This document shows, one piece after another, positions 2,997-56,892 of a stretch of 64,000 nucleotides of DNA (the stretch's first letter is position 1; every line of letters begins with the position of its first letter). The notes under the pieces were generated by a model, which was given only the letters and a program-made list of their open reading frames with translations, was not told the origin of the DNA and did no database searches. The translations under genes and the position numbers were made by a program. Source of the stretch: Zootoca vivipara (lineage: Eukaryota); contig NC_083282.1 of NCBI RefSeq assembly GCF_963506605.1, forward strand, positions 95,232,001-95,296,000, given 5' to 3'.

Positions 2997-3079
2997 TACA
3001 TACCGGTACTTCTGTGTTTGCCTTGTAAATTTATGAACATTTAATTTATGTATTTGAGACCTTAAATTCTTATAACACC

Positions 3080-3680: not shown

Positions 3681-3820
3681 TGCTGCTGTTTCTCCTCCTC
3701 CTCCTTCCTTCTTCTTTTTCTTCTTCTCCTTCTGCTGCTTCTTCCTTCTTATTCCTCTGCTTCCTTCTTCCTCTTCCTCCTCCTCCTCCTCCTCTGCTTC
3801 CTCTCCTCCCTCTGCTTCTT
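3680..3820. repeat. CT-rich (CCT/CTT)n low-complexity tract
   Basis: Visible triplet repeats. Confidence 0.9.
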
Positions 3821-4228: not shown

Positions 4229-5637
4229 CCCTCTTTCTTCTCCTCCTCCTCCCTCTGCTTCTTCCTTCTTATTCTCCTCCTCCTCTCTGTGTTCCTCCCT
4301 GCAGCCCTTCCTCCTCTGCTCACCTCGAGACATTAAAGCCAAGAGGAAAGGGCAGCAGCTTAAAAACACCCCACCCACCCGGTTTCCCCCCCCCCCTTGT
4401 TTTTATTGCCTCTGTGGCAGCAGCATTGGCCTGGCCGGTCAGTCATACAGTGCATCCTAAGTTGCTTTGGCTTGTCCTGGGCAAGATAAAGCCACAGACA
4501 AATTCAGAGAGTAGTAAAGATAATGTTCTAAGTAGGAGCCTAGGAAGCTGGCCTTCCAGGGGGCCTTTATCCCCACCCAGCCCTCCCTGGGGTCAAAGGC
4601 AGGGTCTCGTGCACACCCACTCTTCCCACTGGGCTGCAGCAAAGCCCCTTGTGTGCATTGCCCTTGTGTCACGGCAGAAGGCGCTTGGCTGCAGTTTGTG
4701 GCGCAGGAGGATGTGTGGCAGCTCAGCCAGGACAAATGGCATCTCTTGAGGCTCTTGGTAGAGATGCACCCAGACAGTCAAATCCTGTGTGGTGCTCCTT
4801 CGTAGAAGAATACAGTCGTATGAATGACCCTCCAGAAAGAGAGGAGTCCTCTGTTGGGCTGATGCCACTGTTTTGTGCAATTTCTGTGCAAGAGGGTACG
4901 TGCTCTTCTGTATGGCTCCCAAACGTTCGTATATGTAAAATAAAAAAACACTTAGCCCTGCAAATAAACAAAAACATAGCCCAACTGAAGGGACTGCCTA
5001 AGCAGCTTTGTATTTCAGCAGGAGAAATAGATGAGGCTCTGGTGACATTTTCTCCACCTTCCCATTGCACCTCCTTGCCTCTGATGTCATTGGGAGAACA
5101 AGTTGACCTAACTGGGCCTTCTCCTGGCTCTCTGTGGTTTTTTGTCAGCTCCAACTGCCTTGTGTAATAATGATGATAATGATAATAATAGTAATAATTG
5201 CGTAAACCAAAACTCTTTGTAAGCTGCGTTTGTAGAACACACTGAAAAATATAGATGTGAAGCTTGACTCTAAAAATACATTTTTTAAAAAAGGATGGGA
5301 AACACAACAGACTTCATTTAAAAAACCACACAATGTGCCTTTTCCATTGCTACTGGTACAGCATCTTCACTCTTTGGTGGGTTAAAAATGTTGAATTTGT
5401 CACCTTCTGGATCTCATTAGAAGGTCCCTTTACACACCAAAACAGAACCACCAATCGGGAGAACTGACTTGGCTTCACCCTTTTCTTTCACTCTAGGTCC
5501 TTCAGACGAAGCTTGGTCACTCTTGACCCCGGTGTAAGAGCAGCAGAAACTCGAACTCTTTCCCTGGCAGGCATCCCTGGGAAAAGCTCTCCAAGGCAGA
5601 CGTTCAAGAAGAGAGGCCACCCCGCCCCTGGGGAGCG

Positions 5638-7173
5638 ATGGCCCTGGAAACTGTCAAACAGCTCTTGAGCTTTGACTGTGGCTTGCTGGTGGCTTACCAA
5701 GTAGACATCATCTCCCAGCTGGACTCTATCAGCTTTCAGACCAGCCAAATGAGGGATGTCTTCTTACACCACCCTGAGGTGGTGCTCATTCATCGAACCC
5801 TCAACCCAAGGGGCAAGGCCCTCTACACCTTCATGGTGGACCAGCCTTTCATGCAGCTGGAAGGGGAGATGACCAGAGTGATCCACTTCGCAGTCCCCGC
5901 CAAGGAGTCGGCGGAAGGCCTGGCTCAAATGTACCGCACCTTCAAGGCCTTCAACCCCGAATGGAAGCAGATCAAGACCTTCCTCATTGAGCCGCACTTC
6001 CGGTGGGTGCCGGCGCTGTCAGAAGCCTTCCCCTCTGTGGACATCCAGCTGTCTGCCTTCCACATATGCAAACACTTGCAGTACAAGATCCAGCAGGATC
6101 CCTCCCTGGAAGTCCACACGGAAAGGCTGGTCCTGAGCGCCTTGAGGACCACCATGTGCGCCCCCAGCGAGAGCAACTTGAGGAAGCTGTACACCATCCT
6201 GCGTGGCTTTGTGAAGCCAAGCTGCTTGCCCCAGCCCCACAAGGAGTGGCTGCTCAATGAGAAGATCTGGGCCTTTCACCGCTGGCGGACCTGGGGCCAG
6301 TGCAGCCAGTATTTCAAAGACCTGGAGGTGGTCACGCACAGCTTAAGCCAGATCTTCTGCGTACGGCCCTCCCTGGAATCCTGCATCACCAAAATAGCAA
6401 AGACTTACCAGAAGGGTGCCCAGAAGAGCTGCACGGAGTCTGCGCCAGGCCCAGGCCCTTTGCTCAGTGAGAACGGCTCCTCCTCCACCCAGAACCTGCC
6501 GGTTCTTCACTCCTCTGCTGCAGACTCTCAGAGGCATCTGCTTCCAAGGGATTCTGCTCCGACCGCCACGCCGACTCCCCTGAAGCCGGCGGCAGGGGTT
6601 GCTGCTGAAGAGCCAGCCCGCGAGGCGGCGGCAGAGGTGACTTCCAGAGAGGCTGAGGAGCGGATCAAGCAGTCCTTGAGCGATATTTGCACAGAGCCGG
6701 CGGCCAGGCTGTGCTTGAACGAGTTTGCGGTTGTCCAGAGCTCTGTGCAGCTGATGGGGGACAACGGAGAGACTGCCAGCATGCAGATCCTGGAAGACGC
6801 CCAGACCGTGCGCCACAAGGGCCTCAGCAGCTGCCCGTGCCACTTCAGCCAGACCTTCCAGCTGCCCTGCCGGCACGTCCTGGCTGTGCTGAACTCCGAA
6901 GGGAAGGATTTCGAGCCCGGCAACATCCCAGCGCGGTGGCACAAGGGGAACAGTGTCACCCAAGAGGGACAGAGCAGCGCTGACGGGCTGCTGGAGGTCC
7001 TGAGTTGCTCGTGGGACGAGTTGTTGGACAAGTACCTGGCGGTGTCGTTTCTCACTGCAGAGATCAGCCGGCTTCTGAGCCAGTGCAGTCACGAGGAGTT
7101 TGATCGCAGGTACAGCACCCTCCGCGAGCTGGCCGACAGCTGGATTGGGCCTTACGTGCAGGTGAAGTTGTAA
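5638..7173 (+). CDS. ZSWIM1: Zinc finger SWIM-type containing 1 (single coding exon, 511 aa)
   Basis: Strong similarity to mammalian ZSWIM1 (HRTLNPRGKALYTF, SWIM finger CPCHFSQTFQLPCRH, C-terminus RRYSTLRELADSWIGPY); synteny. Confidence 0.96.
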   Translation: MALETVKQLLSFDCGLLVAYQVDIISQLDSISFQTSQMRDVFLHHPEVVLIHRTLNPRGKALYTFMVDQPFMQLEGEMTRVIHFAVPAKESAEGLAQMYRTFKAFNPEWKQIKTFLIEPHFRWVPALSEAFPSVDIQLSAFHICKHLQYKIQQDPSLEVHTERLVLSALRTTMCAPSESNLRKLYTILRGFVKPSCLPQPHKEWLLNEKIWAFHRWRTWGQCSQYFKDLEVVTHSLSQIFCVRPSLESCITKIAKTYQKGAQKSCTESAPGPGPLLSENGSSSTQNLPVLHSSAADSQRHLLPRDSAPTATPTPLKPAAGVAAEEPAREAAAEVTSREAEERIKQSLSDICTEPAARLCLNEFAVVQSSVQLMGDNGETASMQILEDAQTVRHKGLSSCPCHFSQTFQLPCRHVLAVLNSEGKDFEPGNIPARWHKGNSVTQEGQSSADGLLEVLSCSWDELLDKYLAVSFLTAEISRLLSQCSHEEFDRRYSTLRELADSWIGPYVQVKL

Positions 7174-7631
7174 CTGAGCTCAGGGGCGCTCCTGGGAGCA
7201 GAGCCTTGGGCTCGGCTTCTTGCCCCTTGCTGGTCTGCAGGAGCAGCCTCCTGGCAGGGCTCTCCTCAGAAGTGCCGGAGACTTGAGGTTTACATTTCAT
7301 TCCGCTCCGAGTGTCTGTGGGGCTCCTCCTTTGTGGGGGGAGCTTTGATGAGCAGCCCAAGATTTCTGCACACAACTGCAAACCTGTACTCTTGTTTGAG
7401 ACTTTGCTGGCAACTCAGGGGGGGCCTGGCATGACCTACAGACCTGTGAAGTCCACCCCCTCGTCTCTCTGCATTGCTATTCCTCTAAGTCAGTTGGTTC
7501 TCCATGTCAAAGGGGGCCAGGTGTGTCCCCTGAGTCCTTTTTTCCTCTCCCTCCCCCCCCCTTGATTATTGAAACGGAGCCCCTTGCTCCCAGCAAGAGC
7601 AGGACTTCTCTTTCGTAAAGGCAAGGTCGTC

Positions 7632-7637
7632 AATAAA
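7632..7637 (+). terminator. ZSWIM1 polyadenylation signal AATAAA
   Basis: First AATAAA after the stop codon, followed by T/GT-rich sequence. Confidence 0.65.
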
Positions 7638-8095
7638 CAAGTCTTTCCTGTTTGCCGTTTCTCAAGACCAGCCTTGAAATACCATTCGAAATCTAATTAG
7701 GAAACAGGGCAAGGCTCCTCTGCTGGGGCTCTGCCAGGCGGATGGTACTGTACCGGGTTCAGTGGAAGCGCTCTGTGGGCGTTGTGTCAGACTGGAAACT
7801 CTGGTGGCAAGAGCTCCAGGAAGCAGCTGCAGTTTGGGCTGTTAGGCGGAGAGCTGGGCTATACCTTCCGCTTGGTCCCAAGGAGCCTGGCTGGGAGGTG
7901 TGGGAATGGGAATGAAGGGCTGCCTGGGGTACAGTCCAGACAGGTGTTTGGAGGCTTGGGGAGGGGATCTGGCCAACAACCTGCTTACAGAAGCGGAAGC
8001 ACAGACATAAGCAAAGAGCCTTGCTTTTCACAAACCCTTTATGTTGACTTTTCAAAGCAGAATTAAGTGTTTCTCCCCGCCCCCGCCCCCCGCTC

Positions 8096-8910
8096 TCACT
8101 TCTCCAGCTGCGCCAGGAACAGAGGCAGGAGGCTCCTGTGGGTGGCCCTCTTCCTCTGCTTGTCCCCTCTCTTGCAGGAAGGCCCCAGGCGCTGCATCGC
8201 ATCCCACCTCCTCCTCCTCCTCTGTGCTGCCTCCACTTGGCCGTTGCCAGGCTCCAGGTTCTCTGCCACAAAGCACTGGGCAGCGTGGACCATGTCTTCC
8301 TCCCGCACGCCCGGCACGGGGACCGTGGGAATGCCTGCGATCATCATGGCCAGCGTCAGGATGCAGATGTTGGGGGGCAGGGGCAGCGGTGGCTGGGCCT
8401 CTCTGTCCTTGCCCAGCTTGGCCGACATCAGGAAGACCCCGCTGGGCAAGAATCCCCACCTGGCCAGCGCAAAGTCTCCCCCGGAGCTGCTGGCAAAGTC
8501 CTTGGGTGGCTGGCTGAGAGGGAGAGGGGGCGGGGGCGGGGGCGGCACAGAGGAGAGGAAGAGCCACCGGTCGCCTGTCTGCTCGGCGGGGTATTCCCGG
8601 TCCGGCCCCTGAGGGCACAGCTTCCTGCAGCAGAGGCCTCGATGTGGCTCCCACCTTTCTGGCGCCCCTTGCCCAGGTGTGCCCGGGGACTGGCAGGCTC
8701 CTCCTCCACAAGGTGGCTTGGCGTCCGGATCCAGAAGCAGCTGGGGGCCGCTGAGCTGGTGTGGAGCCCCCTGCTTGGCTTGCAGCTTCCTCCTCAGGAG
8801 CCCGATGGCAGAGGAGAGGCTCCCCAAAGCCGGGGTCTCCCTCGGCATGCCAGGGTAGAGGCTCGACGGGCCACTCGGTGCCATTTCGACCTCTCTGCTG
8901 CCGGATTCTC
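8096..8910 (-). CDS. SPATA25: Spermatogenesis-associated protein 25, coding exon 2
   Basis: Signature [25 protein letters not shown]; acceptor ttttggacAG at 8912-8911, phase 1 and in frame with exon 1. Confidence 0.9.
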
Positions 8911-9935
8911 CTGTCCAAAAGAAAGGCGTGTGTGTTGGGGGGGGGCACCAATTGGAGTGTCTGTGGCACTTTGCAGAGGTGGATTGGCAGGAGGGGGTGT
9001 GAGGAGGACAACTTGGGGGCTCTGGTTCTCAGGCTAAATTGAAGGCGGGGTGAATTGAGGTTGCTAAATTCCTTCCATGCCCTCGATACCAATTTCCCTT
9101 GCCCACACACTCACTGCCTCCTGGTGCTGAGTAATCTATTTCCCAAGAGGAAGATAAACTGGAGCGAGAATCGAGCTGTAATTTTCATTCCATGGGTTCC
9201 CTGCTTCCCACTCCACCCCAGAAGCAACCAGAGAGCTTAGAAGATGGTTCCGTGTGGCCCATATCAGCTGCACCCCCCCCCGGCCTGCCTCTCCCTCGGG
9301 GCCTCATCCCTGTAGCGCTGGGACCTGTTCTCTGGCCTTGTCAAAGAGGTGTTTGGCAGCGGAATGGACCACCTCAGAAGGTGGTGGACTCTTGTCCATT
9401 GGAGGTTTTCATCCCTGTCCACCTGCCAGGGATTATTGGGCTGTGATTCCTGCATTGTGGGGGGTGGGGGGGTGGAGCAGGTGACCATTGGGAGTCCCTT
9501 CCAACTCTACTTCTGTGAGTCTAAGAGGACAGCCACCCATCTCTGGGGTGGCATGAAGAGCTCCCTCCACACACCAATTCAGGGGGTGGGGAACACACGG
9601 GTGGAAGTAGAGGAAGATTTGTTCAAGCTGTGCTTCTGTCCCAGACGAAATGCGGTTTGTGCAGGACACATGAGGGTTGTGGGGAGGGGGCTGCCCAGGC
9701 AAGGAGCACTGCTTCTGAAGGGGTGGGGGGAGAGGAGGGGGCAAGGGGGCTGGAAGTGGGACTCTGCATTTTCCATGGTACAACTAACTGGCAACTTGAG
9801 TAAGCAACCCTCTTCATCACAGGCATTTTGTTCTGCTTGGGGGACCCGGTCCCATTGGAGCTTGAGGGCAGGGGCCTCCCAGAGCAGGGGGTTGTCTGCA
9901 CAAACCTCCTCGGGGGACGAAAGGGGAGCCGTTAC

Positions 9936-9993
9936 CTGGACTTGGAGATGAAAAGAAGCTTGTGGAAGGTTTCCCCATCCCATAATAGGACAT
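9936..9993 (-). CDS. SPATA25: SPATA25 coding exon 1 (MSYYGMGKPSTSFFSSPSP-G)
   Basis: ACCATG start; MSY N-terminus as in mammals; donor CAG|GTAAC, phase 1. Confidence 0.8.
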
Positions 9994-10238
9994 GGTGTCC
10001 GCTGAGAGCTGGCCTGTGCCTGCTGTGGTTGCCTCAGTGCTGTGCCTGTCCTGAACTCTCTCCATTCTAGAACCAGCATCACAGGGCTGGGCCCTTACCT
10101 CACACAGAGCCCCTGGGCAGCCTTGCCCCTCGACTGCTCCAAGGAGTTGGGACCCCTTGGCTCAATGGCAGAGGGAGGGGGGAGTCTGGTGAAGCGGGCA
10201 GGTTGCTAAGCCTCTTCCGGCCCCCCACATTGCCCCCC

Positions 10239-10625
10239 ATAAGTACATCAGGAGAGCCTGCTGGATCAGGCCAAGGGCCCATCAAGTCCAGCCTCCTGTT
10301 CTCACAGCAGCCGACCAGGTGCCCATTATGGGAATCCCGGAAGCAGGATCCGAGCACAAGAGCAACTCTCCCCTCTTGCGGTTTCCAGCAGCTGGCATTC
10401 AGAAGCATCGCTGCCTCCTGTGGGAGTGAGTTCCATAGGTTATGTGCTGTGTGAAGAAATTATTTATTTTCCCAGTCCTGAATCTTCATGGGATGCTCGC
10501 AGATTCTAGTGTTAGCCGAGATGGGGAGAAACCTTTCTCTCCTTTTCTTCATGCACGATGCCTCTTCCCTGCGTTTTCTCTAAACTAAAAAGTCCCAAAC
10601 ACTGAAGCCGTTCTCCACCCCCCTT
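10239..10625 (-). mobile_element. Old CR1 3' fragment (gagcctgctggatcaggcc family; many further copies, e.g. ~13500, 19000-19260, 31900-32380, 34030-34200, 38060-38200, 42780-42930, 46720-46975, 53450-53670)
   Basis: Recurrent diverged motif agagcctgctggatcaggcca...ccatc(t/a)agtccagc. Confidence 0.65.
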
Positions 10626-10780
10626 GATTGTTTCATTGCCATTTAGGCTGCCATTTATGCACTGCAGTATCGGGGCAATAAAACCAAGCCTCCCTCACCT
10701 GCTGCATAACCAGGAGAGAAAGGGAGCTGAGGCTGCAGGAAATGGACACACCCAGGACTTGTTGCTGTTCTAAGGCAGCT

Positions 10781-10786
10781 TTTATT
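10781..10786 (-). terminator. Probable NEURL2 polyadenylation signal AATAAA
   Basis: TTTATT on the + strand about 880 nt past the NEURL2 stop. Confidence 0.55.
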
Positions 10787-10925
10787 AAACTGGCATGACT
10801 TCCATGAAGCCTAGTGTGCTGTGTTGCCACCCTTTCCCCACACCAGCGACATCCTCTGGGCCTTGGAGTTCACGTCACAGAAAGGTCTACCTAGTGCATT
10901 TCTCCTGTAAACACATTACAGTGAT

Positions 10926-11047
10926 AGTTACAGGTAGGTAGCCGGGTTGGTCTGAAGCAGTTAAAAAAAAATTTAAAAATCCTTCCAGTAGCACCTTAGT
11001 TGGTCTCTAAGAGGTGCTACTGGAAGGATTTTTTAAATTTTGTTTTG
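10926..11047. mobile_element. 122-bp hairpin mini-insertion derived from the PLE 3' terminus
   Basis: 13-bp TSD ACATTACAGTGAT (10913-10925, 11048-11060); inverted arms aaaaatccttccagtagcacct / aggtgctactggaaggattttt. Confidence 0.85.
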
Positions 11048-11664
11048 ACATTACAGTGATGTCGGGTCAGAACAACATGCTTGTGTAGAGCTGCTCCCTC
11101 GCCTTAGCTTTATACGTGTGTAGAAGTTAAGTCACCTTCTCGGAGGGAAAGCATGCCTATGTTCCGAGAGCTGGATCAGCGAGAAAAATAGGGCACTTCC
11201 TCGCTTACCAAACTCGCTCAAGGCTGAATTTTTCCTGCAGAAACATTCTTGGCACGTTCGAAGTAAGCAGAATCTCCTAGTGATCTTTAAAAAAAACATT
11301 TAAAATCTCTTTCCGCGTAGGCTGTCTGTCAGAGCATATTCTGTAGTTCCCAATATACCTCGAAACAGGGCAGTGGGCTGGTGCTTCCAGTTCACCGCTA
11401 CATCTGAAAATCAAATCTTCCCTTGGACTGTTCCTGCTCTTTCAAGGTCCTGCTGTTGTTTGGAGGGCTGGTGGTGGTGGAGTCTCTCGCCATATACGTG
11501 GCTGCCCCGGCGGCTACATGGGAAGGGAGGCCCATAAGGCTGGCATTCGGGGGACAGAGCAAGGACGAAATGCGGCTTCACTGCTCTCGGCTTGTTCTTG
11601 CGGACTCTCCATCAAGTCTCTTGGGTGGGCAACTCGTGCAGGCGAAGAAGAAGCCTTGGTCACT

Positions 11665-11780
11665 TCACTCGTATTTGCAGAAGTTCTTCAGCGATGGAGG
11701 GAGGTCGAGCCCATCTATGTCTAGCCGGTGGACAACATGCTTCTGGATGGCCAGCCGGCAGAGGGTCTGCAGGGAGGGGA
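11665..11780 (-). CDS. NEURL2: NEURL2 coding exon 2 (SOCS box FPSLQTLCRLAIQKHVVHRLDIDGLDLPPSLKNFCKYE*)
   Basis: SOCS-box motif; polypyrimidine-AG acceptor at 11782-11781; phase 1 joins exon 1. Confidence 0.95.
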
Positions 11781-14079
11781 CTGGGAGGAGAAGAAGAGAA
11801 AGAAGGGGACTTGGCTGTGAGACAACCTCAGCATGAGGATTGGGAGCCGTTCCTCTTGTCTGGAGAGAGCACGCACCCCAGCCCTAGCAAGACAAGAAAC
11901 CTCCTGTAGGTAAGAGCGGTTCCACTGTGGAATGGAGGACCTCAGAAGGTGGTGGACTATCCTTCAGTGGAGGCATTTAAAACAGGTTGGATGGCCCTCT
12001 GTCAGGGATTCTGCGATTCTTGCCTTGCAAGGGGCCCAATCCAACTCTACAATTGATCATTCGATGACACTGATGAAAGAGCTCCCTCAATGCCTGAACA
12101 GCTCAAGGGGACGCTGGCTGTTGCGAGAGCCCTTAGAAGTCCTCCTAGGCTGGGGCATCAGCCAGGAGGGAGCATCCCTGCAGCTCTGGATAGACCTTCC
12201 AGCTGAGGCTCGGTGGGAGTGACATGTTTCCTCCTTGCACATGAGGAGGAAGGAGCACCATCAAAGAGCCTGGCTGCCTTGCCAGCTCCCACGAAGGGCA
12301 GAGGAGCAGCTGCTGGGCCTGGGCTGCTGCAATGCTGTTGTTTGGAAAGGCAGGTAGTTCAGCCTGGCAACACATCTTAATGGGTGTGCCCCAATTTGCT
12401 CTCCTGGCAAGACCTCCTTCCCTTGCAAGTCTCCATCTGCAAATCCCCCAAGTGACCCAAGAGGGGATAGAAGCCCCCTTTTGACTGCACCCTTGCAGGG
12501 CAATGTGAGGACATCATTCCTCTTCCTATCTGCCTGTTTGTAATGAGATTTCCTCTGCCTCGGTGGTTTGCCTGGCCTTTCGCCCAACGGATTCACCTTG
12601 GCAGCATTTCTGGGCCTCGTTCTTGCAGCAGATTCCTGTCCTAAATCTCTTGCTTGGGCTCCTTCAGTGAGCATGCAGTGAGCATTCTTGGGCCAATCCA
12701 AGAATGAGAACATTTGTCACTCAACATGCAGTGACAGCGCCAGAACTTGCCAGGATGCTCCAAGTCCATGAAGATCAGAACTGAGCAGTGTGAGGCAAGG
12801 CCTGTCCGGCAGATGCAATGACAGAGCTGGCTTTCTGACGGACCCTCTCCCTGTTCTGCAGTGGCCCTCCGGACATGCAGCTGTTCTCCAGAGGGGAATC
12901 CCCTTCCTGGCTGCTACTCTGCACCCCTTTCTCCTTTCAGCTTATCTGAATGGAAGGTGTGCGTCATAAGGCAGAGCTCTGTGGCCACTAGGGCTACCCT
13001 GGGCTGGAAGATAAGATATCTTTATTGTCATTGTCCCCTTGCGGGAACAACGAAATTACTCACAAGATGTCACAAACCTTGGGAGAAATTGGAGGGGAGG
13101 TGTCATTCTGGAACTTGGAGGGGAGGCTGCTTGGAGCTTGTGGGCCCCTTCACCTGCCAAACCAGCATTTGTTCTTGGCAGGCAGCTCCCTGCCTTCTTT
13201 GCTTTGTTTTGCAGGTTTGTCCTTGGAAAATCAAGCCACCTTTGCAGAAACAGGCTTCTGAGTGACACAGCCTGACCTTGCTGACATTTCAGAGAAGGGC
13301 CTTGAGCATCATCCCAGGCCAGCGCCTTCTCTCCTGCCGTGCTTTGGGACACTTCCTATCAATTGCATTCCTGTGACGTATTTAGGGAAGACGGCAATCA
13401 GGGCTAAAACATCCCGGACAGAGTTGCCAAAGGCAGTTGCTGTTGTGCATCGTGCAGCCCACTTGGCACCTTCCCTCAGATCCATTCCCTGAACAAAGGC
13501 AGAGCCTGCTGGATCAGGCCAATTGCCCATCTAGTCCCGCATCCTGTCCTCACAGTGGCCCACCAGATGCCTCTTTGGGAAACCAGCAAACAAGATCTGA
13601 GCACAAGAGCAACTCTCTTCCTTCCTGGGGTTTCCAGCCACTGGGATTCAGAACAATTGCTGCCACTTTGGCATGGGGAACCAACTTCCCCCTTCATTCC
13701 TCACCCACTTTGCCAGTATGTACATGCCAAAGACAAGCTGTGCTCACACCTTGGGTGAAAACCTCCCTTTGGCTCCCTGTCAGAGGCAGCATCTCTCTTC
13801 ACCCCCTGGTGCTTCCAGACATAACTTCCATGTTACTAACACAACAACCGGGTTTGTTTTGCCAACGCCGCTGCCTCCCTTTCAACGCCCTAAAGGCTCC
13901 TTGAAGACTGAAAAATACCAAGCGGCCTGTCACTCTGCTAATATACTTGGAGTGCTTTTGAAGTGCGAGCTGAGTCCTATGGCAATGCAAGACTCTGTAG
14001 TTTGGTTACCATGAGGACATGAGAAGAGTCTGCTGGATCAATTGTGACACGAAGGCTGGCAACATCAACCCCAGTCAGT

Positions 14080-25488: not shown

Positions 25489-26257
25489 CTCTTGGCACTC
25501 GCCATGCCAAGGCGGGAGAGAGCGAGGCAGGGAATTCTGCATTCATATTGGAATTGCTTTTGGAGGTGTGCTTGCTGCCTTGCGCTCCTTTGGGGGGACG
25601 GGGGGAGAACAGCAGCATATGGATTTGATACAGTCGATAGCAATAATTTAGAAGCGTTCAGCTGGATCAGGCCAAAGGGGCCCCAGAACCCAGCATCCTG
25701 TTTTCCCAGGGGCTTGAGAAGCCCGCAAGCAGGGTCAGAGTGCAACACGGCCTCTCTCCTCCTGCAGCTTCCAGCATCTGATATACCGGTATATAAGTTG
25801 GCCCCAAGTGGCTATTGCCCCAACGGAATGTCTAGTTGCCATTTGGGACCAAGGCGGCTCTAAGGATGGACTGACTTGCAATTCTCAGTTAAACATCCGG
25901 CTAGTTCAGAGGAAACTCTTGAGCTAGGTTAAGAACTTTGAGAACCGAAAAAAGAAAAGTCGCTTGATCCAGAGACAGTGCACCAATATATTGGCCTATT
26001 CCGACCTCTTTCTCTGAATGGGGACTGATCCTGCTCAGGCTGCACAGAAAAAGCATTTGGGTTCCTGAATGTTCTAGTGATTGTACAGCTAGAATATAAC
26101 GGATTGAATTCTACAGAGTGGGGTAATAATGTGTTAAAACAGTCCAGATCCAAGGATCCCTGGATGGTTTCAGGCAGGCTCATTTGAAACACACAGGGGA
26201 GATTCTGTGTAGCTATCCTGACTAGTAGCCATTGCTAGCCTTATTCACCTCTTATGA

Positions 26258-26475
26258 CAGGTAGGTAGCCGTGTTGGTCTGAGTCGAAGCAAAATAAAAA
26301 AATTCCTTCAGTAGCACCTTAAAGACCAACTAAGTTGATATTTTGGTATGAGCTTTCGTGTGCATGCACACTTCTTCTGAAGAAGTGATCTGAAGAAGTG
26401 TGCATGCACACGGAAGCTCATACCAAAATATCAACTTAGTTGGTCTTTAAGGTGCTACTGAAGGAATTTTTTTAT
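26258..26475. mobile_element. Palindromic PLE mini-insertion with two degenerate hammerheads
   Basis: 14-bp TSD TTCACCTCTTATGA (26244-26257, 26476-26489); inverted arms. Confidence 0.85.
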
Positions 26476-26981
26476 TTCACCTCTTATGAATTTGTCTAAT
26501 CCTCTTTTAAAGCTGTCCACGTTTGTGGCCATGCCTGCATCTTTGAGGTTGATGCCACAATTGGCCTAGCCTTTCAGGGTGGGATGCTGCATGCCGGCCG
26601 TGGGCGACGAGAACTCAACCAGCATTTATGAGATCAGCCACCCTCCTTGTGACGAGGATGATAATCTCTTGATAGCTTGGAAGTGCAGTTGTTTCCCAGT
26701 ATCGCTCATCGCAACTCATGGCCTGTCAGCTCCCTCTGCAAAACAAATAATCTAAATTGGAAGTTAATTGGGATGATGCACCACGGGGTGACTCAGATTC
26801 GAAACCCGAATGTGTGAACTTTCTCACCGTGAGGCTGGCTGCCTCCTGATGTGCCCAGGCCTGCTCTGCCCAGAGCCTTGAAACAAGGACCTGCTGCGAT
26901 TTGGGTCACAGGAGAGGGAATCCCCTTGCCTTGTGTCGCAATAACAGCCGCTTCTCCCTCCCTCCCTCCTTCCCTCGGCAG

Positions 26982-33255: not shown

Positions 33256-33339
33256 GGAGCGGGTCACATGGTGCCTTCGGACCGCCCAAGACCCGCCTTC
33301 AACATGTTCCAGCGCTTCATCACGGGGCAGCCCTTCTAG
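33256..33339 (+). CDS. CTSA: Cathepsin A last exon with catalytic His (GAGHMVP)
   Basis: 84 nt to TAG; total CDS 1440 nt = 479 aa. Confidence 0.96.
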   Translation, partial: GAGHMVPSDRPRPAFNMFQRFITGQPF

Positions 33340-33847
33340 CCCTCTAGCCTTCTGCCTCCGAGGGGAACTGCGTCCTCCGTGCGCGATGGGCCCTTTCGCC
33401 CACACCTGCTGTGCCAAGATGGCAGCTGGGACCTCCCACAGGGCCGCTTGCCCTCCGTTGCCAGGCGCTGGGGAGGCACAAGGACTCTCCCGACCCTCCG
33501 CCCTGCAGGCCGCTCTCCTGGACTTCCAGGCTGCCCTGGTGGTTGGGGAGATTCCACAAGGGACTCCCTCCTCCTCCTCCTCCTCTGCTCTTGGGGCAGC
33601 CCTTCCCTTCCCTCCCCTCCCCTCCCCTCCCCTCCCCAGCACTGCCTGTAGGGTTTTTGCACTGCCTTTGAGGAGGAGGAGGAGGAGGAGGAGAGCTGCC
33701 TCCCTCTCCCCCCCCCCCTTGCACCCCTAACGGGACCACTTCTCTCAGCCTTAGTTCTCGGTCAGTCTTGACGAATGGATCCGAATCACTGGTGAAAGAA
33801 AAGCCACTCCTGGGCTGCACCCTCACGGCTCTGGGCCGGGGCCCACG

Positions 33848-33853
33848 ATTAAA
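33848..33853 (+). terminator. Probable CTSA polyadenylation signal ATTAAA
   Basis: First canonical hexamer after the stop codon. Confidence 0.55.
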
Positions 33854-34819
33854 ACTATTTTTCTAAGGGGACTGGAGTTCTGCGTCTGTCTCTGGGGGAG
33901 CCCCGGGGGGTGGGGGCTCACCTGGCTCTGCGGCTTCTCTCCCGTTTTCCTCCCCCCTGGTGCTCTCTTGCTCTGCGTTTTGGGGGGAGGGATGGGGGCT
34001 AGAGGCTGCCCTTCTTTTCCCTGCCCCAAATGGCAGATCCTGCTCTTGACGGCTGCCAGCAATGATAGCCAAGCCCCGTCCCCACGGCTGGAGCCAGCAA
34101 TGCTTCTGAATACCGCTTGCTCGAAACCAAAGGAAGGGAGATTTCTCTTGCGGTCGGATCCTGCTTGCGGGTTTCCTACAGGCCTCTGTGGCAATGCTGT
34201 TTTTAAGTGGCTTTAGTCGAAAACACAACAGGAGGAAGCGCATTCATGTGCTTTCTCTTCCTTCTCTTCTTGCTCCTTGGCCATTTCCAGATGCTGGAGG
34301 AGGTGATGACTCAGCCGAGGCTCATTATGGGATGGCTTTTGTAGCCGGGGCAGGTTGGGCCAGCTTCCCCTGAGCTCTGGCCGCCAGGCAGCCACCCGGC
34401 TCCCCAGCTTTGCCTTCCAATAGCTGCCTTGGGTGGGGCTGGCATGCTCAAGCATGCATCTCCCCAGAGGTGGCTGCAGGTGTATCTTTTCCCTGGGAGG
34501 GCGGAGCATTTGCACCAGCTACCTGTCTCCCAATCTCATCTGTCCACAAGCCCTGGGAAATGCCTGGCATCCTGAATCCAATGCAGTGAATCTGCCTACC
34601 TTCCGGCTTTGCCCTCTCAACACACTTTAGGGTCATTCACCAAATGTTGAATCTCAGAAATGAAACAGCTTCATTTTTTAGCCACACATCAAAAGTCTTC
34701 CACTACATGTCTAAGGCCATAGTTCTAGTTACAGGTAGGTAGCCGTGTTGGTCTGAGTCGAAGCAAAATAAAAAAATTCCTTCAGTAGCACCTTAAAGAC
34801 CAACTAAGTTTTTATTTTG

Positions 34820-34857
34820 GTATGAGCTTTCGTGTGCATGCACACTTCTTCAGATAC
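34820..34857 (-). ncRNA. Minimal type I hammerhead ribozyme (core intact)
   Basis: Minus strand GTAT-CTGAAGA-A-GTGTGCATGCACAC-GAAA-GCTC^ATAC. Confidence 0.75.
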
Positions 34858-35392
34858 ACTGGAAACAGAAGCAACCAGACCCTTATATATATATTCAGAG
34901 GGTGGGGTTTCTGTCATGGGAATGGGTGATGGGCTGTAAGAGTGGTAAACCTGTTGATGGCTGTTAACGACTGGTGATTACTGCAATAGGTCCTGCGGGG
35001 GGGGGGGGGGACAAGGGCTGAGGCTAAAGAAAGCTTGATCATGCATAATGATTTCCATTTCAGCAATTTCTCTTTTCTGTAAAAAAAATTTCAGAAACAG
35101 ACTGGAAAGAGAAATTGCTGAAATGGAAATCATTACCAAGCTTAAAACCACGGAGCCACCTGGGATGAATAAAGACATAGGATTCTTATCTCATTATGCA
35201 TGATCAAGCTTTCTTTAGCCTCAGCCCTTGTCCCCCCCCCCCCCCCGCAGGACCTATTGCAGTAATCAGCAGTCGTTAACAGCAGTCGTTAACAGCCATC
35301 AACAGGTTTACAACTCCTATCAGCCCATCACCCATTCCCACCACCACCCACCCTCTGAATATATATAAGGGTCTTGTTGCTTCTGTTTCAGT

Positions 35393-35430
35393 GTATCTGA
35401 CGAAGTGTGCATGCACACGAAAGCTCATAC
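35393..35430 (+). ncRNA. Minimal type I hammerhead ribozyme (core intact)
   Basis: GTAT-CTGACGA-A-GTGTGCATGCACAC-GAAA-GCTC^ATAC; predicted cleavage between 35426 and 35427. Confidence 0.75.
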
Positions 35431-37145
35431 CAAAATAAAAATTTAGTTGGTCTTTAAGGTACTACTGAAGTAATTTTTTTATAAGGCCATAGTAACAGCT
35501 TAAAGAAAGAAGTGAATCTCTAAATTGTTGGGGTGATCACTGCTACTTAAGGTACTAATAGTGCAATTTAATCAGAGAAGTGTAGAGTTAGGAAGGGACT
35601 CCTAAGTGTCATCTAATCCAGCCCCCACTGCAACACAGGAATCTCCGCTATAGAAGCTCTGACAGATAGCCCCTCAGCCTCTCTTTAAAGCCCCCCAGTG
35701 AAGGAGAGACCACCTCCTTCCCAGAAAGTCTGGTCCTCTTTTGAAAAGCTGCTACCGACGGAAAGTTCTTCCTGATGTTTAGTCAGAATCTCTTCCCTTA
35801 TAACTTGAATCCATTGGTAAGTAAGTGATGTTAAGTTTGCAGAAATCACCCGTTTCTGCAAGCAAGCCATAACCCTGCAGAGTTCCAGGTGCCTGAACTT
35901 AGAAATGCTTGTTTATTCCCCATTAAATCACAGCTCGGTCTGGCAGGCCCACTTCCTCCTGTGGAGTGAGGAGTCTGCCCTTGGGGGGGGGCTAGGGGGG
36001 GCCCTGCGGCAGAAGAGGTCCAGCGTTCATAAGGTCTAAAGTGCCATTCCTGGTTTTGCCAGGGAGGCCTTAGGGCGGCTCCTGCTGCTGCCGGCCTGGG
36101 TCAGTGGCTGAGCTAGATGGCCCATTGTCTGACTTGGCACAAAGCAGATTCCCGTGGCTCCCTTGACAGCAATAAAGCCCACGGCCACGTTGGGTTGTGA
36201 CCATCAAATCTCCAAGCCAGGATTAACGAGGAAGGGAATTTTAAAAATAAGCAGCCAGCGTTCGCCAGTCTTTCCCTTGCCAATCTTCTGGGTTACCACC
36301 CCCAGCATCCCTGACCCCCCCCCCGGCTGGGTCTGATGGGGATGGCAGCCCAGAATATTAGGGGGTGGGGGGGGGGAGGCTGGTATGTAAGGTCTGGACG
36401 CACAGGCGGACTCTGCAGCTCTGAAAAGGGCTCTGGAAAAGGAATCCATCTGCCGAAGTAGACAAGGATTTGGATTCTAAGACCTGTTTATGGAAGGAAA
36501 TCTGTCTTGTCTTCCTGCTTCCCATCCCAGGAGAAGTCCTTCCCCCACTTCAGAGAGGGCTGACTCTGCTGCTGCGCCGAAACTCGTTTCAAAGTCCTCC
36601 TTGGGTGGTCTTGGGGGAGCCACATTCTCTCAGGCTCACTGCCCCCATCTGTAGTATGGAGATCATAATACTGGCCTACCTTCTAGGGTCGTCGTAACTT
36701 ACACCATGATGGTGCAGGTGATGCGCTGGGCTGTGCAGCTGCCAAGTGGGTAGCGGCGGCAGCAGTGTTAAAGGGCTGTGGGCATGGGGGGGGGCTGCTT
36801 TTCCTTCCACTGGGGACTGACTTTCTCCCCTGCATATTGACCCACATAGGGAAATAATAAGGACTATCCATCTCTGTGGCTTTGCCTTTCCAGAGGGGAA
36901 TTCAACCCCCCAGGATGTTGCTACGCTGTTTGGGCCAGACTGCCTGCTGTGTGGCAAAGCCCCCCTCGAGGCCTGGCGCCTTCTTGCAAGATGCCGCCCC
37001 TTGGCACAAGGCCCTCAGCAGTAGTCCCGGGCTGAGCCACAGAGCGGGCAAAGCGCCTCCACAGACTGGCGCACTGGGAATGGAGCAGCCCGGTCCCCAC
37101 AGAAGACAGCAGGCAGGTGGCAAAAGGCAAGTGGTTTTGACCTGT

Positions 37146-54420: not shown

Positions 54421-55592
54421 TGTGCCAACTTTTAAATGTTTGCTGAAAACTTCTATTTCTCCAGGCCTGTGCAGGTGCCTAAGAGCACATCTCCCACAAT
54501 TGGCTTATTGATGCTTTTAGCCACTTTGCTTTCTAAAATTGTTATTGATACTTTTATTGTATGGTTTTTACATCTTTAACATTGCTTGCTTCTGTGCATC
54601 TGAACTGTCTGCTCAACTCATTCAAGGATTCCCAAACTTTATCTGGCCTCGCCTCCTTGGTTAAACTCAACCCTAGTGTCCCCTACCCTATTAAAAACAT
54701 TATTCAGAATAGTGGTTTGCACGACCCACCAGGGAAGACAATAACATTCAAAACAGTAAGAAGTAATTGTACGTTAATTCAAAATCCAGTGAAAGCAATT
54801 TAATTAATTCAAGGAAACTGATGAGCTTGAGTTTTTTCCAAGTCTGATAGGCCTCCCTGCCACTTAGCATCCCCCCCCAGTAATTCCTCCACCAACCAGC
54901 GGCACAACTGCCCACTTTGGAAAGCGCTGCTGCTAATTCATTACAAGCAAAAATACACCATCGCCACCAACGGCTTATTACAGACAGTAAAAATTCCCAC
55001 CACTGTGTTTTCACTGCAGCAAAACTACTTCTTGTCCTCTCCAACTTTTCAATGGCCTTTCTGCCTCTGGGCTTTTGCTCAGCCAGTGGCAGATTTAGCC
55101 CAGGAGGTCTATGGTTTGGACAAGGCTGAGCGTGCCAGAGGCCCCCGCCCTGGAAAGTACTACTGGCCAAGCCTGGAGCGTTTGAGGGCTGCCCTTCTGC
55201 AAGACAGCCTCCAGCTGGAAGAGATGCAGGAGGCAAAGGAGAGCCCAGGGCAAGCCAGGGACCACAGCAGGGCAGAGATGAGAGAGGCTTTGCAAACCAA
55301 AATAGCTGTGGGCGCAATGACTCACTCTGGGAGGGCCAGTGGGGGGAACAGCCCATTCTCACCAGGCTGTAAGGGGCAAAGCCTTGCTCTGACCACAAGA
55401 CTGAGCCAGATTTGATGCAGGTGGGTCCCTGGTGGCCATTTGGATGCAGTAACAGGGAGGGAGGAAATGTTTTGGATGAGGCCGCTAGGCCAAGAGCAAA
55501 AGAGTGAGGAATTAATGGAAGCCATTTCCCCCATCAAAATCCCCGCCAGCCGATTTCCACCCCATGGTGGGGTGGAAGAGATACTGGACTCC

Positions 55593-55634
<42 letters not shown>

Positions 55635-55722
55635 ATACAATTTAGGGATATGGAGTTTAGGCAGAGGGCTAAGCAGATTCTCTGTCTCATGGCTGCCCCA
55701 AGCAAATTTCAAAACCCACAAG

Positions 55723-55755
<33 letters not shown>
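55593..55755. repeat. (TAT)n and (AAT)n microsatellites
   Basis: Tracts at ~55593-55632 and ~55723-55755. Confidence 0.9.
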
Positions 55756-56339
55756 GACATTTCTAACTCACATCCGTTGTAGCTCTTTTGGAAACAGCTT
55801 TAGAAGATTGCAGAGCGCCACGCACTGAGGGATGCAGCCCCAAAGTTGGATGCTTTCAAAATGCCCCCTTAAAAGAAGGGCCCTCACCGCTCAGGGGCAA
55901 AGCCTCCACTCTGCCAACCGCAGCTCCCGGGCCGTGGCATCTCCAGACAGGGCTGGGCAAGAAATCCTGGAGAGCAACTGCCACTCCATGTAGAAGACAA
56001 TACTGGGCTGGATGGGCCAGTAGGTCAGACTCAGGAGAAGACAGCGTCCAGCAGCAGCAACAGCAGGCTGAGAAGGGTCAATATTTTCTCCCTCTTCCCA
56101 AAGTAACTTCATTACTACTGGGGGGTGACCAAAGATTCATTCATCTCCTTCTAAACTCCTATCTCCTAAGGCAGTTTGCATCCATCGAAAACCAGTCAAA
56201 ACCCCTTTTGCTTTTAAATTATTTTATTTTTTCATGCTTTTATTTTTTGTAAACTTGTAAACCGCTTTGACATGTTTTGTGATTTAGCAATACAATATAT
56301 AAACGCCTTTATAAATAAAGTAAGATGCAAACAATACAT

Positions 56340-56892
56340 AAGCCAAAGGATAAATGGACATAAATCTGACATCAGGAACCACAAGACAGAGAAACCAGTA
56401 GAAGAACACTTCAATCTCCCAGGACATTCTATACAAGATCTCAAAGCAGCTGTTTTATTACAGAAAAATTTCAGGAACAGACTGGAAAGAGAAGTTGCTG
56501 AATTGGAACTCATTACCAAGCTTAAAACCATGGAGCCACCTGGGATGAACAAAGACATTGGATTCTTATCTCATTATGCATGATCAAGCTTTCTTTAGCG
56601 CCTCAGCCCTTGCTTTTTCCCCGCAGGACCTATTGCAGTCATCAGCAGTCGTTAACAGCCATCTACAGGTTTACCACTCCCATCAGCCCATCACCCATTC
56701 CCCCCACCCCACCCCCACCCTCTGTATATGCATAAGGGACTGACTTCTTTTTCAAGTGTATCTGAAGAATTGTGCATGCACACAAAAGCTCATACCAAAA
56801 TAAAAACTTAGTTGGTCTTTAAGGTGCTACTGAAGGAATTTTTTTATTTTGCTTCAACTCAGACCAACACGGCTACCTACCTGTAACTAGAA
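56340..56892 (+). mobile_element. Penelope-like element 3' part: GIY-YIG endonuclease C-terminus plus pseudo-LTR with a mutated hammerhead (56758-56795)
   Basis: QRINGHKSDI...PVEEHFNLPGHSIQDLK...ELELITKLKTMEPPGMN; GAAA changed to AAAA in the ribozyme core. Confidence 0.9.

What the first reader, a model, noticed from the sequence alone, without database searches (positions are those of the whole stretch)
34724..35481. Two core-intact hammerhead ribozymes on opposite strands between the convergent CTSA and PLTP 3' ends
Seen: a TSD-bounded (TAAGGCCATAGT) Penelope-like insertion made of inverted pseudo-LTRs. Each arm carries GTAT-CTGANGA-A-GTGTGCATGCACAC-GAAA-GCTC^ATAC (minus 34857-34820, plus 35393-35430). 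This gives stem I GTAT/ATAC, a perfectly palindromic 14-nt stem II, a vestigial palindromic stem III (AGCT) and a UC cleavage site. Each copy has a TATA-like tract before it and AATAAA right after it. Established: PLE terminal repeats carry minimal type I hammerheads, which generally need to dimerise to cleave. Inference: CTSA read-through (+) meets the plus ribozyme and PLTP read-through (-) meets the minus ribozyme, so the insert could act as a bidirectional cleavage/termination cassette that limits transcriptional collision. Alternatively the ~300-bp arms pair first, silence the ribozyme and create a dsRNA substrate.
Basis: partly seen in the sequence, partly recalled or inferred. Interest (0 to 1): 0.8.

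Follow-up and report, generated by a model that had tools for sequence, protein, structure and literature searches.

The report
Fold-back Penelope retroelement insertion with hammerheads
This is an ordinary, dead fragment of a Penelope-like jumping gene, inserted as two mirror-image copies that each keep the family's tiny hammerhead ribozyme motif; nothing suggests it helps the two neighbouring genes stop transcription.

Summary
A 758-bp insert (34724-35481) sits between exact 12-bp target-site duplications. It consists of two inverted arms, each carrying an exact minimal type I hammerhead core (minus 34857-34820, plus 35393-35430).

It is a 5'-truncated Penelope-like element (PLE). The arms hold the last ~33 codons of the GIY-YIG endonuclease ORF, a TATA tract, the hammerhead, AATAAA and the 3' end. 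Only one arm carries the 44-nt "tail". Inverted copies plus a one-sided tail are the published footprint of PLE integration. Two more inserts in this window are built the same way (10926-11047, 26258-26475).

The proposed bidirectional termination cassette is not supported:
- Each strand carries only one sense hammerhead, with a 1-bp helix III, and it lies in the downstream arm.
- A read-through RNA of either strand folds into one long hairpin (-526 and -536 kcal/mol) that buries the ribozyme.
- Raw RNA reads fall to zero about 850 nt (CTSA side) and 1.65 kb (PLTP side) before the insert.
- No read ends pile up at the predicted cut sites.
- Hammerhead cleavage leaves a 5'-OH, a poor substrate for the Xrn2 torpedo.
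- Intact cores are what neutral drift predicts (arms 96.7% identical).

This scan already holds 181 notes on hammerhead/Penelope pieces in this genome. A known kind; low interest.

The parts
34712..34723 (.). Left target-site duplication TAAGGCCATAGT
   Evidence: direct repeat D4: exact 12-nt copy immediately left of the insert.
35482..35493 (.). Right target-site duplication TAAGGCCATAGT
   Evidence: direct repeat D4: exact 12-nt copy immediately right of the insert.
34724..35080 (-). Minus arm. A 5'-truncated PLE 3' portion, element sense on the - strand, with the element's 3' end facing outward to the left flank.
   Evidence: It aligns to the plus arm (96.7%) and to the solo copy at 56464-56891 (88%).
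34724..34767 (-). 44-nt 'tail' (TTTTGCTTCGACTCAGACCAACACGGCTACCTACCTGTAACTAGAA in element sense), present on this arm only.
   Evidence: It is absent from the plus arm and present in the solo copy ending at 56891. In the RNA reads the boundaries of other genomic copies cluster at 34726-34728 and at 34765-34769. That gives two alternative 3' ends about 40 nt apart.
34820..34857 (-). Minimal type I hammerhead motif, minus copy (GUAU-CUGAAGA-A-GUGUGCAUGCACAC-GAA-AGCU-C^AUAC). Predicted cut between 34824 and 34823.
34884..34895 (-). TATA tract about 27 nt upstream of the minus hammerhead, probably the element's own pLTR promoter box.
   Evidence: for the position. The promoter role is inferred from the Penelope pLTR literature as cited in PMC8557442.
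35081..35100 (.). Turn-around loop between the two arms.
   Evidence: I5: arms 35046-35080 / 35101-35135, 20 nt apart.
35101..35481 (+). Plus arm. The same PLE 3' portion in + sense, ending 44 nt short of the element's full 3' end, at AATTTTTTTA.
35102..35203 (+). Remnant of the PLE ORF end (..LEREIAEMEIITKLKTTEPPGMNKDIGFLSHYA*), the C-terminus of the GIY-YIG endonuclease domain.
   Evidence: ORF 35048..35203. It has the same C-terminus as the 103-aa ORF of the solo copy. The Atlas's nearest clusters for that ORF include GIY-YIG-named ones. There is no Pfam hit.
35130..35190 (+). 61 nt present in the plus arm and in the solo copy but missing from the minus arm; the deletion is flanked by TCATTA microhomology.
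35360..35368 (+). TATA tract about 25 nt upstream of the plus hammerhead.
35393..35430 (+). Minimal type I hammerhead motif, plus copy (N7 = C). Predicted cut between 35426 and 35427.
35434..35439 (+). AATAAA directly after the plus hammerhead (the mirror copy is at 34816-34811 on -).
33848..33853 (+). ATTAAA, the likely CTSA poly(A) signal, about 870 nt upstream of the insert.
   Evidence: Raw RNA depth with + sense falls to 0 after the 33739-33871 bin.
37146..37151 (-). AATAAA, the likely PLTP poly(A) signal, about 1.65 kb upstream (in - sense) of the insert.
   Evidence: RNA depth with - sense is seen only at 37064-37325, and contigs end at 37139/37144.

Best explanation
This is a dead-on-arrival, 5'-truncated insertion of a Penelope-like retrotransposon (PLE) in the 3.3-kb gap between the poly(A) sites of two convergent genes.

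Origin. Each arm is the last ~360-380 nt of the element: ORF end, TATA, hammerhead, AATAAA, 3' end. Both arms have the element's 3' end facing outward against the 12-bp target-site duplication. The most likely origin (inferred, about 60%) is that the element's GIY-YIG endonuclease cut both target strands and both 3'-OH ends primed reverse transcription of the element RNA. One priming used the terminal start site, giving the arm with the 44-nt tail. The other used the internal start site, giving the arm without it. The two cDNAs then joined in the middle. Snap-back self-priming of one cDNA is the alternative (about 30%).

The hammerheads. They are inherited passengers of the element's terminal repeat. 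They stay core-intact only because the insert is young enough (3.3% divergence between arms).

At this locus they are almost certainly inactive. Helix III is one base pair. No second sense copy lies in cis. In any RNA crossing the insert, the ribozyme pairs with its already-transcribed complement inside a ~330-bp hairpin.

No host function in transcription termination is indicated.
For: Shown here:
- Exact 12-bp TSD at the ends of the arms.
- Arms 96.7% identical, and the only difference within the hammerhead is at the free position N7.
- The plus arm and a solo 5'-truncated copy at 56272-56891 share the same ORF end. The Atlas's nearest clusters to it include clusters named GIY-YIG or carrying PF01541 (scores 0.93-0.94).
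- Five copies of the motif occur in the window, and the other three have single inactivating core changes: U4A, A13G, and G12A plus G10.1U.
- Three independent TSD-flanked inverted inserts in the window each have a ~34-44-nt outer extension on one arm only.
- Boundaries of other genomic copies in the reads cluster at two sites about 40 nt apart, 34726-34728 and 34765-34769.
- Read-through RNA of either strand folds into one hairpin at -526.1 and -535.7 kcal/mol, z = -43 and -42, with the hammerhead fully paired.
- The monomer hammerhead fold is only -6.8 kcal/mol, z about 0.
- The helix-III double hammerhead scores -11.1 kcal/mol, against -13.6 for two monomers and -30.6 for a helix-II-swapped duplex.
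- Raw RNA depth is 0 in the unique flanks 34271-34669 and about 0 in 35468-35733. No pile-up of read ends occurs at 35426/27 or 34824/23.
- The insert is present in samples from at least two other studies: contigs enter it from unique flank at 34746 and 35458/35466.

From the literature:
- Minimal hammerheads sit in PLE terminal repeats, are inactive as monomers and only weakly active as dimers. Pairs 100-700 bp apart on opposite strands were already noted (PMC4209133).
- An inverted 5'-truncated copy plus a 30-40-bp tail at one end is the standard PLE footprint (PMC8557442).
- The Anolis PLE protein cuts and extends both strands and starts reverse transcription at two sites that bracket the tail. 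No RNA-seq reads began or ended at its hammerhead site (PMC11167929).
Against: - No reverse-transcriptase sequence lies in this copy. The ORF remnant gives no Pfam GIY-YIG hit, so protein-level PLE membership rests on an Atlas lead and on motif order read by eye.
- The RNA evidence is thin. Only about 6% of two runs was read, and the neighbouring 3' UTRs reach only 3-17x, so read-through below roughly 10% would be missed.
- Contigs of two runs of uncertain type run unbroken from the CTSA last exon to the insert's left edge (34716/34746). Some RNA may therefore reach it.
- Nearest-neighbour folding ignores tertiary contacts, proteins and helicases.
- Ribozyme activity was not measured.
- The choice between two-sided priming and snap-back is inference.
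Confidence: 0.88

Rival explanations
1. The insert is a bidirectional ribozyme terminator. CTSA read-through is cut by the plus hammerhead and PLTP read-through by the minus hammerhead, which limits transcriptional collision.
For: - Both cores are exact.
- The insert lies between convergent 3' ends.
- Contigs of two runs of uncertain type are continuous from the CTSA last exon to the left edge of the insert, so some RNA may reach it.
Against: - There is one sense ribozyme per transcript direction, helix III is 1 bp, and no partner lies in cis. Monomers of this class are inactive and dimers only weakly active (PMC4209133).
- The sense ribozyme is always in the downstream arm, and the full RNA is a -526/-536 kcal/mol hairpin.
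- Raw RNA depth is zero in the unique flanks and no read ends pile up at the cut sites.
- The genes have their own poly(A) signals 0.85 and 1.65 kb before the insert.
- Cleavage leaves a 5'-OH, a poor Rat1/Xrn2 substrate (PMC3241649).
- Core intactness is expected under neutrality: about 0.4 changes expected in 12 core positions at 3.3% divergence.
- Five PLE pieces in 64 kb make the location unremarkable.
Confidence: 0.03
2. The insert matters as a long inverted repeat. When transcribed from either neighbour, it forms a ~330-bp dsRNA hairpin that is edited by ADAR or diced into small RNAs. This could affect the neighbours or silence the PLE family.
For: - Very stable predicted hairpin on both strands.
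- Sub-threshold hits to generic miRNA-hairpin models over the inner 35030-35144 hairpin.
Against: - All the Rfam hits are far below gathering scores, mostly to plant families, and reflect hairpin shape only.
- No locus-specific RNA is seen in the flanks.
- Reads over the arms are 89-93% from other genomic copies, so editing cannot be read off.
- Nothing shows selection on the arms.
Confidence: 0.06
3. The two outward-facing TATA-hammerhead units act as live promoters and drive antisense transcripts into the CTSA and PLTP 3' ends.
For: - A TATA tract lies 25-27 nt before each hammerhead.
- Many genomic copies start at the first base of the hammerhead (loose ends at 34851-34859). That fits a transcription start there.
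- In Penelope the pLTR holds the start site (PMC8557442).
Against: - Raw RNA depth just outside both arms is 0 to 0.23.
- AATAAA follows within about 40 nt.
- This copy has no ORF to express.
Confidence: 0.03
4. Alternative origin. The fold-back arose by snap-back self-priming of a single cDNA (hairpin-primed second-strand synthesis), not by priming from both cut target strands.
For: - The loop is short (20 nt) with ACAG/CTGT microhomology at the turn.
- The arms were evidently near-identical at birth.
Against: - In three independent inserts, the shorter arm stops in the same T-rich stretch about 35-44 nt from the element's end.
- That matches a defined second reverse-transcription start site (PMC11167929), not a random stop.
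Confidence: 0.3

Closest known systems
Minimal hammerhead ribozymes of metazoan Penelope-like elements (Cervera & de la Pena 2014, PMC4209133)
   Same: - CUGANGA and GAAA boxes.
- Extra unpaired nucleotide between A9 and G10.1.
- G10.1-C11.1 pair.
- Long helix II and 4-bp helix I.
- Helix III reduced to A15.1-U16.1 with a palindromic AGCU.
- Location in the element's terminal repeat.
- Pairs on opposite strands 100-700 bp apart were already reported there.
   Different: - Helix II here is a perfect 14-nt palindrome.
- By nearest-neighbour energies this favours a helix-II-swapped duplex dimer (-30.6 kcal/mol) over the catalytic helix-III dimer (-11.1).
- Activity of this lizard family was not tested here.
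Standard EN+ PLE insertion footprint: pseudo-LTRs, inverted 5'-truncated copy, one-sided 30-40-bp tail (PMC8557442; Anolis PAc biochemistry, PMC11167929)
   Same: - 5' truncation.
- Inverted copy.
- TSD.
- Tail on one end only.
- Two alternative 3' ends about 40 nt apart.
- Hammerhead in the terminal repeat.
   Different: - This copy has no full-length unit between the inverted parts; it is just two truncated 3' ends joined head to head.
- The tail is 44 nt, slightly above the quoted 30-40.
- In PAc the ORF start overlaps the hammerhead. In this family the ATG inside helix II opens only an 11-codon frame (read from the sequence).
Animal non-LTR retrozymes (tandem hammerhead repeats that give circular RNAs; bioRxiv 10.64898/2026.07.22.740005)
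   Same: Derived from PLE terminal repeats; carry the same type I hammerhead.
   Different: Retrozymes are head-to-tail direct repeats, so two sense ribozymes lie on one transcript. Here the copies are inverted, so each transcript has one sense and one antisense copy.
Co-transcriptional cleavage (CoTC) terminator elements downstream of poly(A) sites (recalled from memory, not tested)
   Same: Position downstream of a poly(A) site; the idea that RNA cleavage there gives a nuclease an entry point.
   Different: - No cleavage was seen here.
- Hammerhead chemistry gives a 5'-OH, not the 5'-phosphate that Xrn2/Rat1 prefers (PMC3241649).
- The ribozyme is caged in a hairpin.

Membership tests
Minimal type I hammerhead of PLEs (min-HHR) | Conserved core: C3-U4-G5-A6-N7-G8-A9, G12-A13-A14, A15.1-U16.1, H17 | tested here: met
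   Exact in both arms. N7 = A (minus) or C (plus). C17 lies at 34824 and 35426.
Minimal type I hammerhead of PLEs (min-HHR) | Unpaired nucleotide between A9 and G10.1, and a G10.1-C11.1 closing pair | tested here: met
   CUGANGA-A-G...C-GAAA. These features are listed as family hallmarks in PMC4209133.
Minimal type I hammerhead of PLEs (min-HHR) | Helix III of 1 bp with palindromic 15.2-16.2, allowing a 4-bp intermolecular helix III | tested here: met
   A-GC-U = AGCU palindrome. However, the resulting double hammerhead is predicted at only -11.1 kcal/mol.
Minimal type I hammerhead of PLEs (min-HHR) | Self-cleavage at H17 | not testable with these tools
   Indirect evidence only: no pile-up of read starts or ends at the predicted sites among reads from all genomic copies. 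The same negative result was reported for the Anolis PLE (PMC11167929).
Rfam hammerhead families (covariance models, Rfam release 15) | Covariance-model score at or above the gathering threshold | tested here: not met
   No hammerhead family was listed at E<=10 on 4 kb or on an 81-nt query. Nothing reached gathering score in the whole window.
Penelope-like element (EN+ PLE) | Telomerase-like reverse transcriptase ORF | tested here: inconclusive
   The insert is 5'-truncated and holds no RT-coding sequence. The longest related copy in the window (56272-56891) is also truncated within the endonuclease domain.
Penelope-like element (EN+ PLE) | C-terminal GIY-YIG endonuclease | tested here: inconclusive
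   Only the C-terminal part survives. There is no Pfam hit at E<=1. The Atlas's nearest clusters include ones named GIY-YIG or carrying PF01541, at 0.93-0.94 with 164-193 shared features. The motif order YI(S)Q..R..NGH..E..N was read by eye.
Penelope-like element (EN+ PLE) | Complex insertion with an inverted 5'-truncated copy and a 30-40-bp tail at one end only | tested here: met
   A 44-nt tail on the minus arm only. Two further inserts have the same layout. Copy boundaries fall in two clusters about 40 nt apart. The footprint is described in PMC8557442 and PMC11167929.
Penelope-like element (EN+ PLE) | Hammerhead motif in the terminal repeat, and target-site duplication | tested here: met
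   TSDs of 12, 13 and 14 bp in three inserts.
Non-LTR retrozyme | Head-to-tail tandem units, each with a sense hammerhead | tested here: not met
   The two copies are inverted, not direct. No tandem unit is present at this locus.
Ribozyme/CoTC-type transcription terminator | Read-through RNA reaches the element and is cleaved there, giving an exonuclease entry site | tested here: inconclusive
   Raw reads give depth 0 in the unique flanks and no read ends at the cut sites, but sampling is shallow. Contigs of uncertain type reach the left edge. The 5'-OH product is a poor Rat1/Xrn2 substrate (PMC3241649).

The most novel reading that the evidence does not exclude
The fold-back insert might have been co-opted as a barrier between the convergent CTSA and PLTP transcription units. 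This could work through rare hammerhead cleavage in trans-dimers with abundant family transcripts. It could also work through its ~330-bp dsRNA hairpin being cut or edited co-transcriptionally, so that it measurably shortens read-through from both sides.
Probability: 0.03. Interest if true: 0.55.

Novelty: already known. Interest (0 to 1): 0.1.

Why it matters
It matters little for host biology. It is one of very many PLE fragments in this genome, and its layout and ribozyme motif are textbook for the class.

Its modest value is as an illustration. Three independent fold-back inserts in one 64-kb window each carry the tail on one arm only. That fits the in vitro result that a PLE enzyme extends both cut strands and starts reverse transcription at two sites (PMC11167929).

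Had the termination idea been true, it would have been a rare case of a transposon-borne ribozyme domesticated for Pol II termination. The evidence points the other way.

Tried and rejected
1. Rfam search for hammerhead families at three scopes. No hit. This shows the curated models do not cover this minimal class; it does not show the motif is absent.
2. The sub-threshold miRNA-precursor hits over 35030-35144 were rejected as generic hairpin matches. They scored 30-48 bits against gathering scores of 60-139, and most were to plant families.
3. Pfam on the ORF remnants and a PDB sequence search. Nothing; the fragments are too short.
4. Reading RNA editing or expression of this locus from depth over the arms. 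Rejected because 89-93% of laid reads continue into unlike sequence, meaning they come from other copies.
5. Using run X5 as a DNA control for presence or absence. Its contig depths (314/388 over the gene ends against 13-16 between them) do not look like plain whole-genome DNA. I used it only to show that the insert's right edge is present.
6. Selection on the cores. At 3.3% arm divergence, about 1.2 differences are expected in 38 nt and about 0.4 in 12 core positions. One difference was observed, at N7. There is no signal either way.
7. The search of earlier findings by place returned nothing near the locus.
8. One paper search failed on a term with an apostrophe and was rerun with allowed words.

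The majority line that DNA alignment prints by default was not used. The N run at 40901-41063 was left untouched.
Full report
**Observation**

- An exact 12-nt direct repeat, TAAGGCCATAGT, lies at 34712-34723 and 35482-35493 and brackets a 758-bp insert (D4).
- Inside, the inverted-repeat blocks I1-I8 join into a single fold-back. A gapped alignment of the two arms in element sense gives 296 identical and 10 different positions (96.7%) plus a few indels.
- The 30-nt core string CTGANGAAGTGTGCATGCACACGAAAGCTC is exact at 34853-34824 (-) and 35397-35426 (+). Dinucleotide shuffles of the window expect 0.00 matches.
- With the flanking GTAT/ATAC this is stem I (4 bp), C3-A9, one extra A, a 14-nt palindrome, G12-A14, A15.1-GC-U16.1 and C17.
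- As a hairpin, the palindrome gives a 5-bp stem II with a 4-nt loop.
- TATA tracts lie 25-27 nt upstream of each motif and AATAAA lies just downstream.
- The neighbours are a Peptidase_S10 gene on the + strand and an LBP/BPI/CETP-family gene on the - strand. The last Peptidase_S10 coding piece reaches profile position 420/420 and ends at 33336, with the stop codon at 33337-33339. The last LBP/BPI/CETP coding piece ends at the stop codon 37326-37328.
- I accept the names CTSA and PLTP from the exon translations and my memory of the human proteins. Orthology itself was not tested.

**What it is**

The insert is a fragment of a dispersed repeat, not a unique structure.
- BLAST of the insert against the window finds related pieces at 2930-2984, 10925-11049, 26257-26477 and 56464-56891.
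- The copy at 56272-56891 continues upstream into a 103-aa ORF ending ..PGHSIQDL..LEREVAELELITKLKTMEPPGMNKDIGFLSHYA*. The plus arm encodes the same C-terminus (ORF 35048..35203).
- Pfam does not recognise these short remnants. The protein Atlas places the 103-aa piece nearest to clusters named GIY-YIG or carrying PF01541, at scores of 0.93-0.94. That is a lead, not proof.
- Each arm is therefore ORF end, about 155 nt of spacer, TATA, hammerhead, AATAAA, 3' end. The 3' end faces outward on both sides.

The arms are not equal.
- The minus arm runs 44 nt further outward (34724-34767, ending ..GGCTACCTACCTGTAACTAGAA in element sense). This is the same end as the solo copy at 56891.
- The plus arm stops at AATTTTTTTA.

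Two other TSD-flanked fold-back inserts in the window have the same asymmetry.
- 26258-26475 has a 14-bp TSD and 89-nt arms, with a 34-nt extension on one side.
- 10926-11047 has a 13-bp TSD, with a ~35-nt extension on one side.

In the RNA reads, the points where other genomic copies diverge from this one cluster at two places, 34726-34728 and 34765-34769 (table 7). The family therefore has two alternative 3' ends about 40 nt apart.

**Fit to the literature**

- Cervera and de la Pena (PMC4209133) described minimal type I hammerheads in the terminal repeats of metazoan PLEs, reptiles included. [quoted passage not shown] They also noted pairs of such motifs 100-700 bp apart on opposite strands. 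A single motif showed no cleavage in vitro, and dimers or trimers cleaved only weakly.
- Craig et al. (PMC8557442) describe the standard PLE footprint: heavy 5' truncation, an inverted 5'-truncated copy forming inverted repeats, and a 30-40-bp tail often present at one end only.
- Frangieh et al. (PMC11167929) worked with an Anolis PLE protein.
  - It cuts and extends both target strands.
  - Reverse transcription starts at two sites, and the tail is the sequence between them.
  - Hammerhead mutants do not change insertion in vitro.
  - Public RNA-seq held no reads beginning or ending at the hammerhead site.
- The fold-back here, with both 3' ends outward and the tail on one arm, is what priming from both cut strands at the two start sites would give. 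That step is my inference. Snap-back of a single cDNA remains possible.

**Would the ribozymes work at this locus?**

- The monomer fold is marginal at -6.8 kcal/mol, no better than shuffles. Its helix III is a single pair.
- A + strand transcript contains the antisense of the minus copy first and the sense plus copy about 540 nt later. A - strand transcript is the mirror image. Each transcript therefore has one sense ribozyme, always in the downstream arm.
- The whole insert as RNA folds into one long hairpin on either strand: -526.1 and -535.7 kcal/mol, z = -43 and -42. The hammerhead is fully paired to its complement in that fold.
- For two copies in trans, the classical helix-III double hammerhead evaluates to -11.1 kcal/mol. 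Two separate monomers give -13.6, and a duplex formed through the 14-nt palindrome gives -30.6.
- These are nearest-neighbour estimates without tertiary contacts or proteins. All of them point to a caged, partnerless ribozyme.

**Does transcription reach it?**

- ATTAAA at 33848 (+) and AATAAA at 37151-37146 (-) are the first poly(A) signals after the two stop codons.
- In two raw, apparently stranded RNA runs, signal of CTSA sense is present in 33340-33871 at depth 3-17. It is 0 in 33872-34669, apart from 2.2 at 34138-34270.
- Signal of PLTP sense is present only in 37064-37325 and is 0 in 35867-37063.
- The unique flanks next to the insert have depth 0 to 0.23.
- Depth over 34670-34935 is hundreds-fold higher, but 89-93% of those reads run on into unlike sequence. 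They come from other copies.
- The only listed pile-up of read ends is at 35339. None is at 35426/27 or 34824/23 (table 6).

Caveats on the RNA evidence:
- Only about 6% of each run was read, so sensitivity is low.
- Contigs from two runs of uncertain type are continuous from the CTSA last exon to 34716/34746, so low-level RNA may reach the left edge.
- Contigs cannot show amount or strand.

Even if cleavage happened, a hammerhead leaves a 5'-OH, which is a poor substrate for Rat1/Xrn2 (PMC3241649).

**Selection and placement**

- At 3.3% arm divergence, about 1.2 differences are expected across the 38-nt motif and about 0.4 in the 12 strictly conserved positions. One is seen, at the free position N7. 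Intact cores therefore need no selection.
- The other three motif copies in the window each carry core-killing changes, as expected for neutral decay of older copies.
- With five PLE pieces in 64 kb, the chance that at least one falls in a given 3.3-kb interval is roughly 1 in 4 (arithmetic).
- Contigs from two other studies enter the insert from unique flank (table 8). No empty-site joint appeared among the joints shown, so the insert is not obviously polymorphic.

**Earlier notes of this scan**

The scan's notes hold 181 entries on hammerhead plus Penelope in this same genome. Four follow-ups on other pieces reached the same kind of verdict and call the genome a lizard's. I did not test the species label. 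My conclusions rest on the calls cited above.

**Verdict**

The termination-cassette idea is unsupported and mechanistically unlikely. This is a known kind of element in a known arrangement, and interest is low.

The assembly gap at 40901-41063 was left alone. Read laying was given 3,986 letters.

Noticed in passing
window 26258-26475: Second TSD-flanked (TTCACCTCTTATGA) head-to-head PLE mini-insert. The arms are 89 nt and 98% complementary, and the two hammerheads lie only 10 nt apart. Each core carries one inactivating change (CAGAAGA; GGAA). The 34-nt tail is on the left arm only.
   Followed up: partly
window 10926-11047: Third TSD-flanked (ACATTACAGTGAT) fold-back insert, from a related subfamily. 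The arms are truncated before the hammerhead, so it holds tail sequence only. Again one arm is about 35 nt longer.
   Followed up: partly
window 56272-56891: Solo 5'-truncated PLE copy with a 103-aa ORF remnant of the GIY-YIG endonuclease C-terminus and the full 3' tail. Its hammerhead is broken (G10.1U and G12A).
   Followed up: partly
window 34724-34859 (reads): The terminal ~135 nt (hammerhead to tail) is far more abundant in the runs than the rest of the arm: summed contig depth 590,000 against 1,800-13,000 in X5. Copy boundaries are sharp at the first bases of the hammerhead (34851-34859). This points to a very abundant short unit that starts at the hammerhead and may correspond to the pLTR transcription start.
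   Followed up: partly
window 34997-35010 and 35232-35246: G14 and C15 homopolymer tracts sit inside the arms. The solo copy at 56610-56620 has CTTTTTCCCC in the same place, so the run expanded in this lineage of the family.
   Followed up: no
window 33340-37325, run X5: The run is labelled 'DNA?', yet its contig depths are 314 and 388 over the two gene ends and only 9-16 over the intergenic stretch. Its contigs also stop at the PLTP poly(A) site. It behaves like RNA or a mixed library, not plain genomic DNA.
   Followed up: no
window 42100-42700: Both strands show repeated ORF pieces (..GRVEGKPAKRFARLWGFPSTRPTAS..). This suggests a GC-rich tandem or inverted repeat inside the PLTP-side gene region.
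   Followed up: no
window 55590-55760: Long trinucleotide microsatellites (ATA/AAT-type runs that translate as poly-I and poly-Y) lie about 500 nt upstream of the solo PLE copy.
   Followed up: no
window 2930-2993: Short minus-strand fragment of another PLE subfamily. It holds the 3' half of a hammerhead with loop variant CACG, joined directly to ..TACCTGTAACTAG.
   Followed up: no
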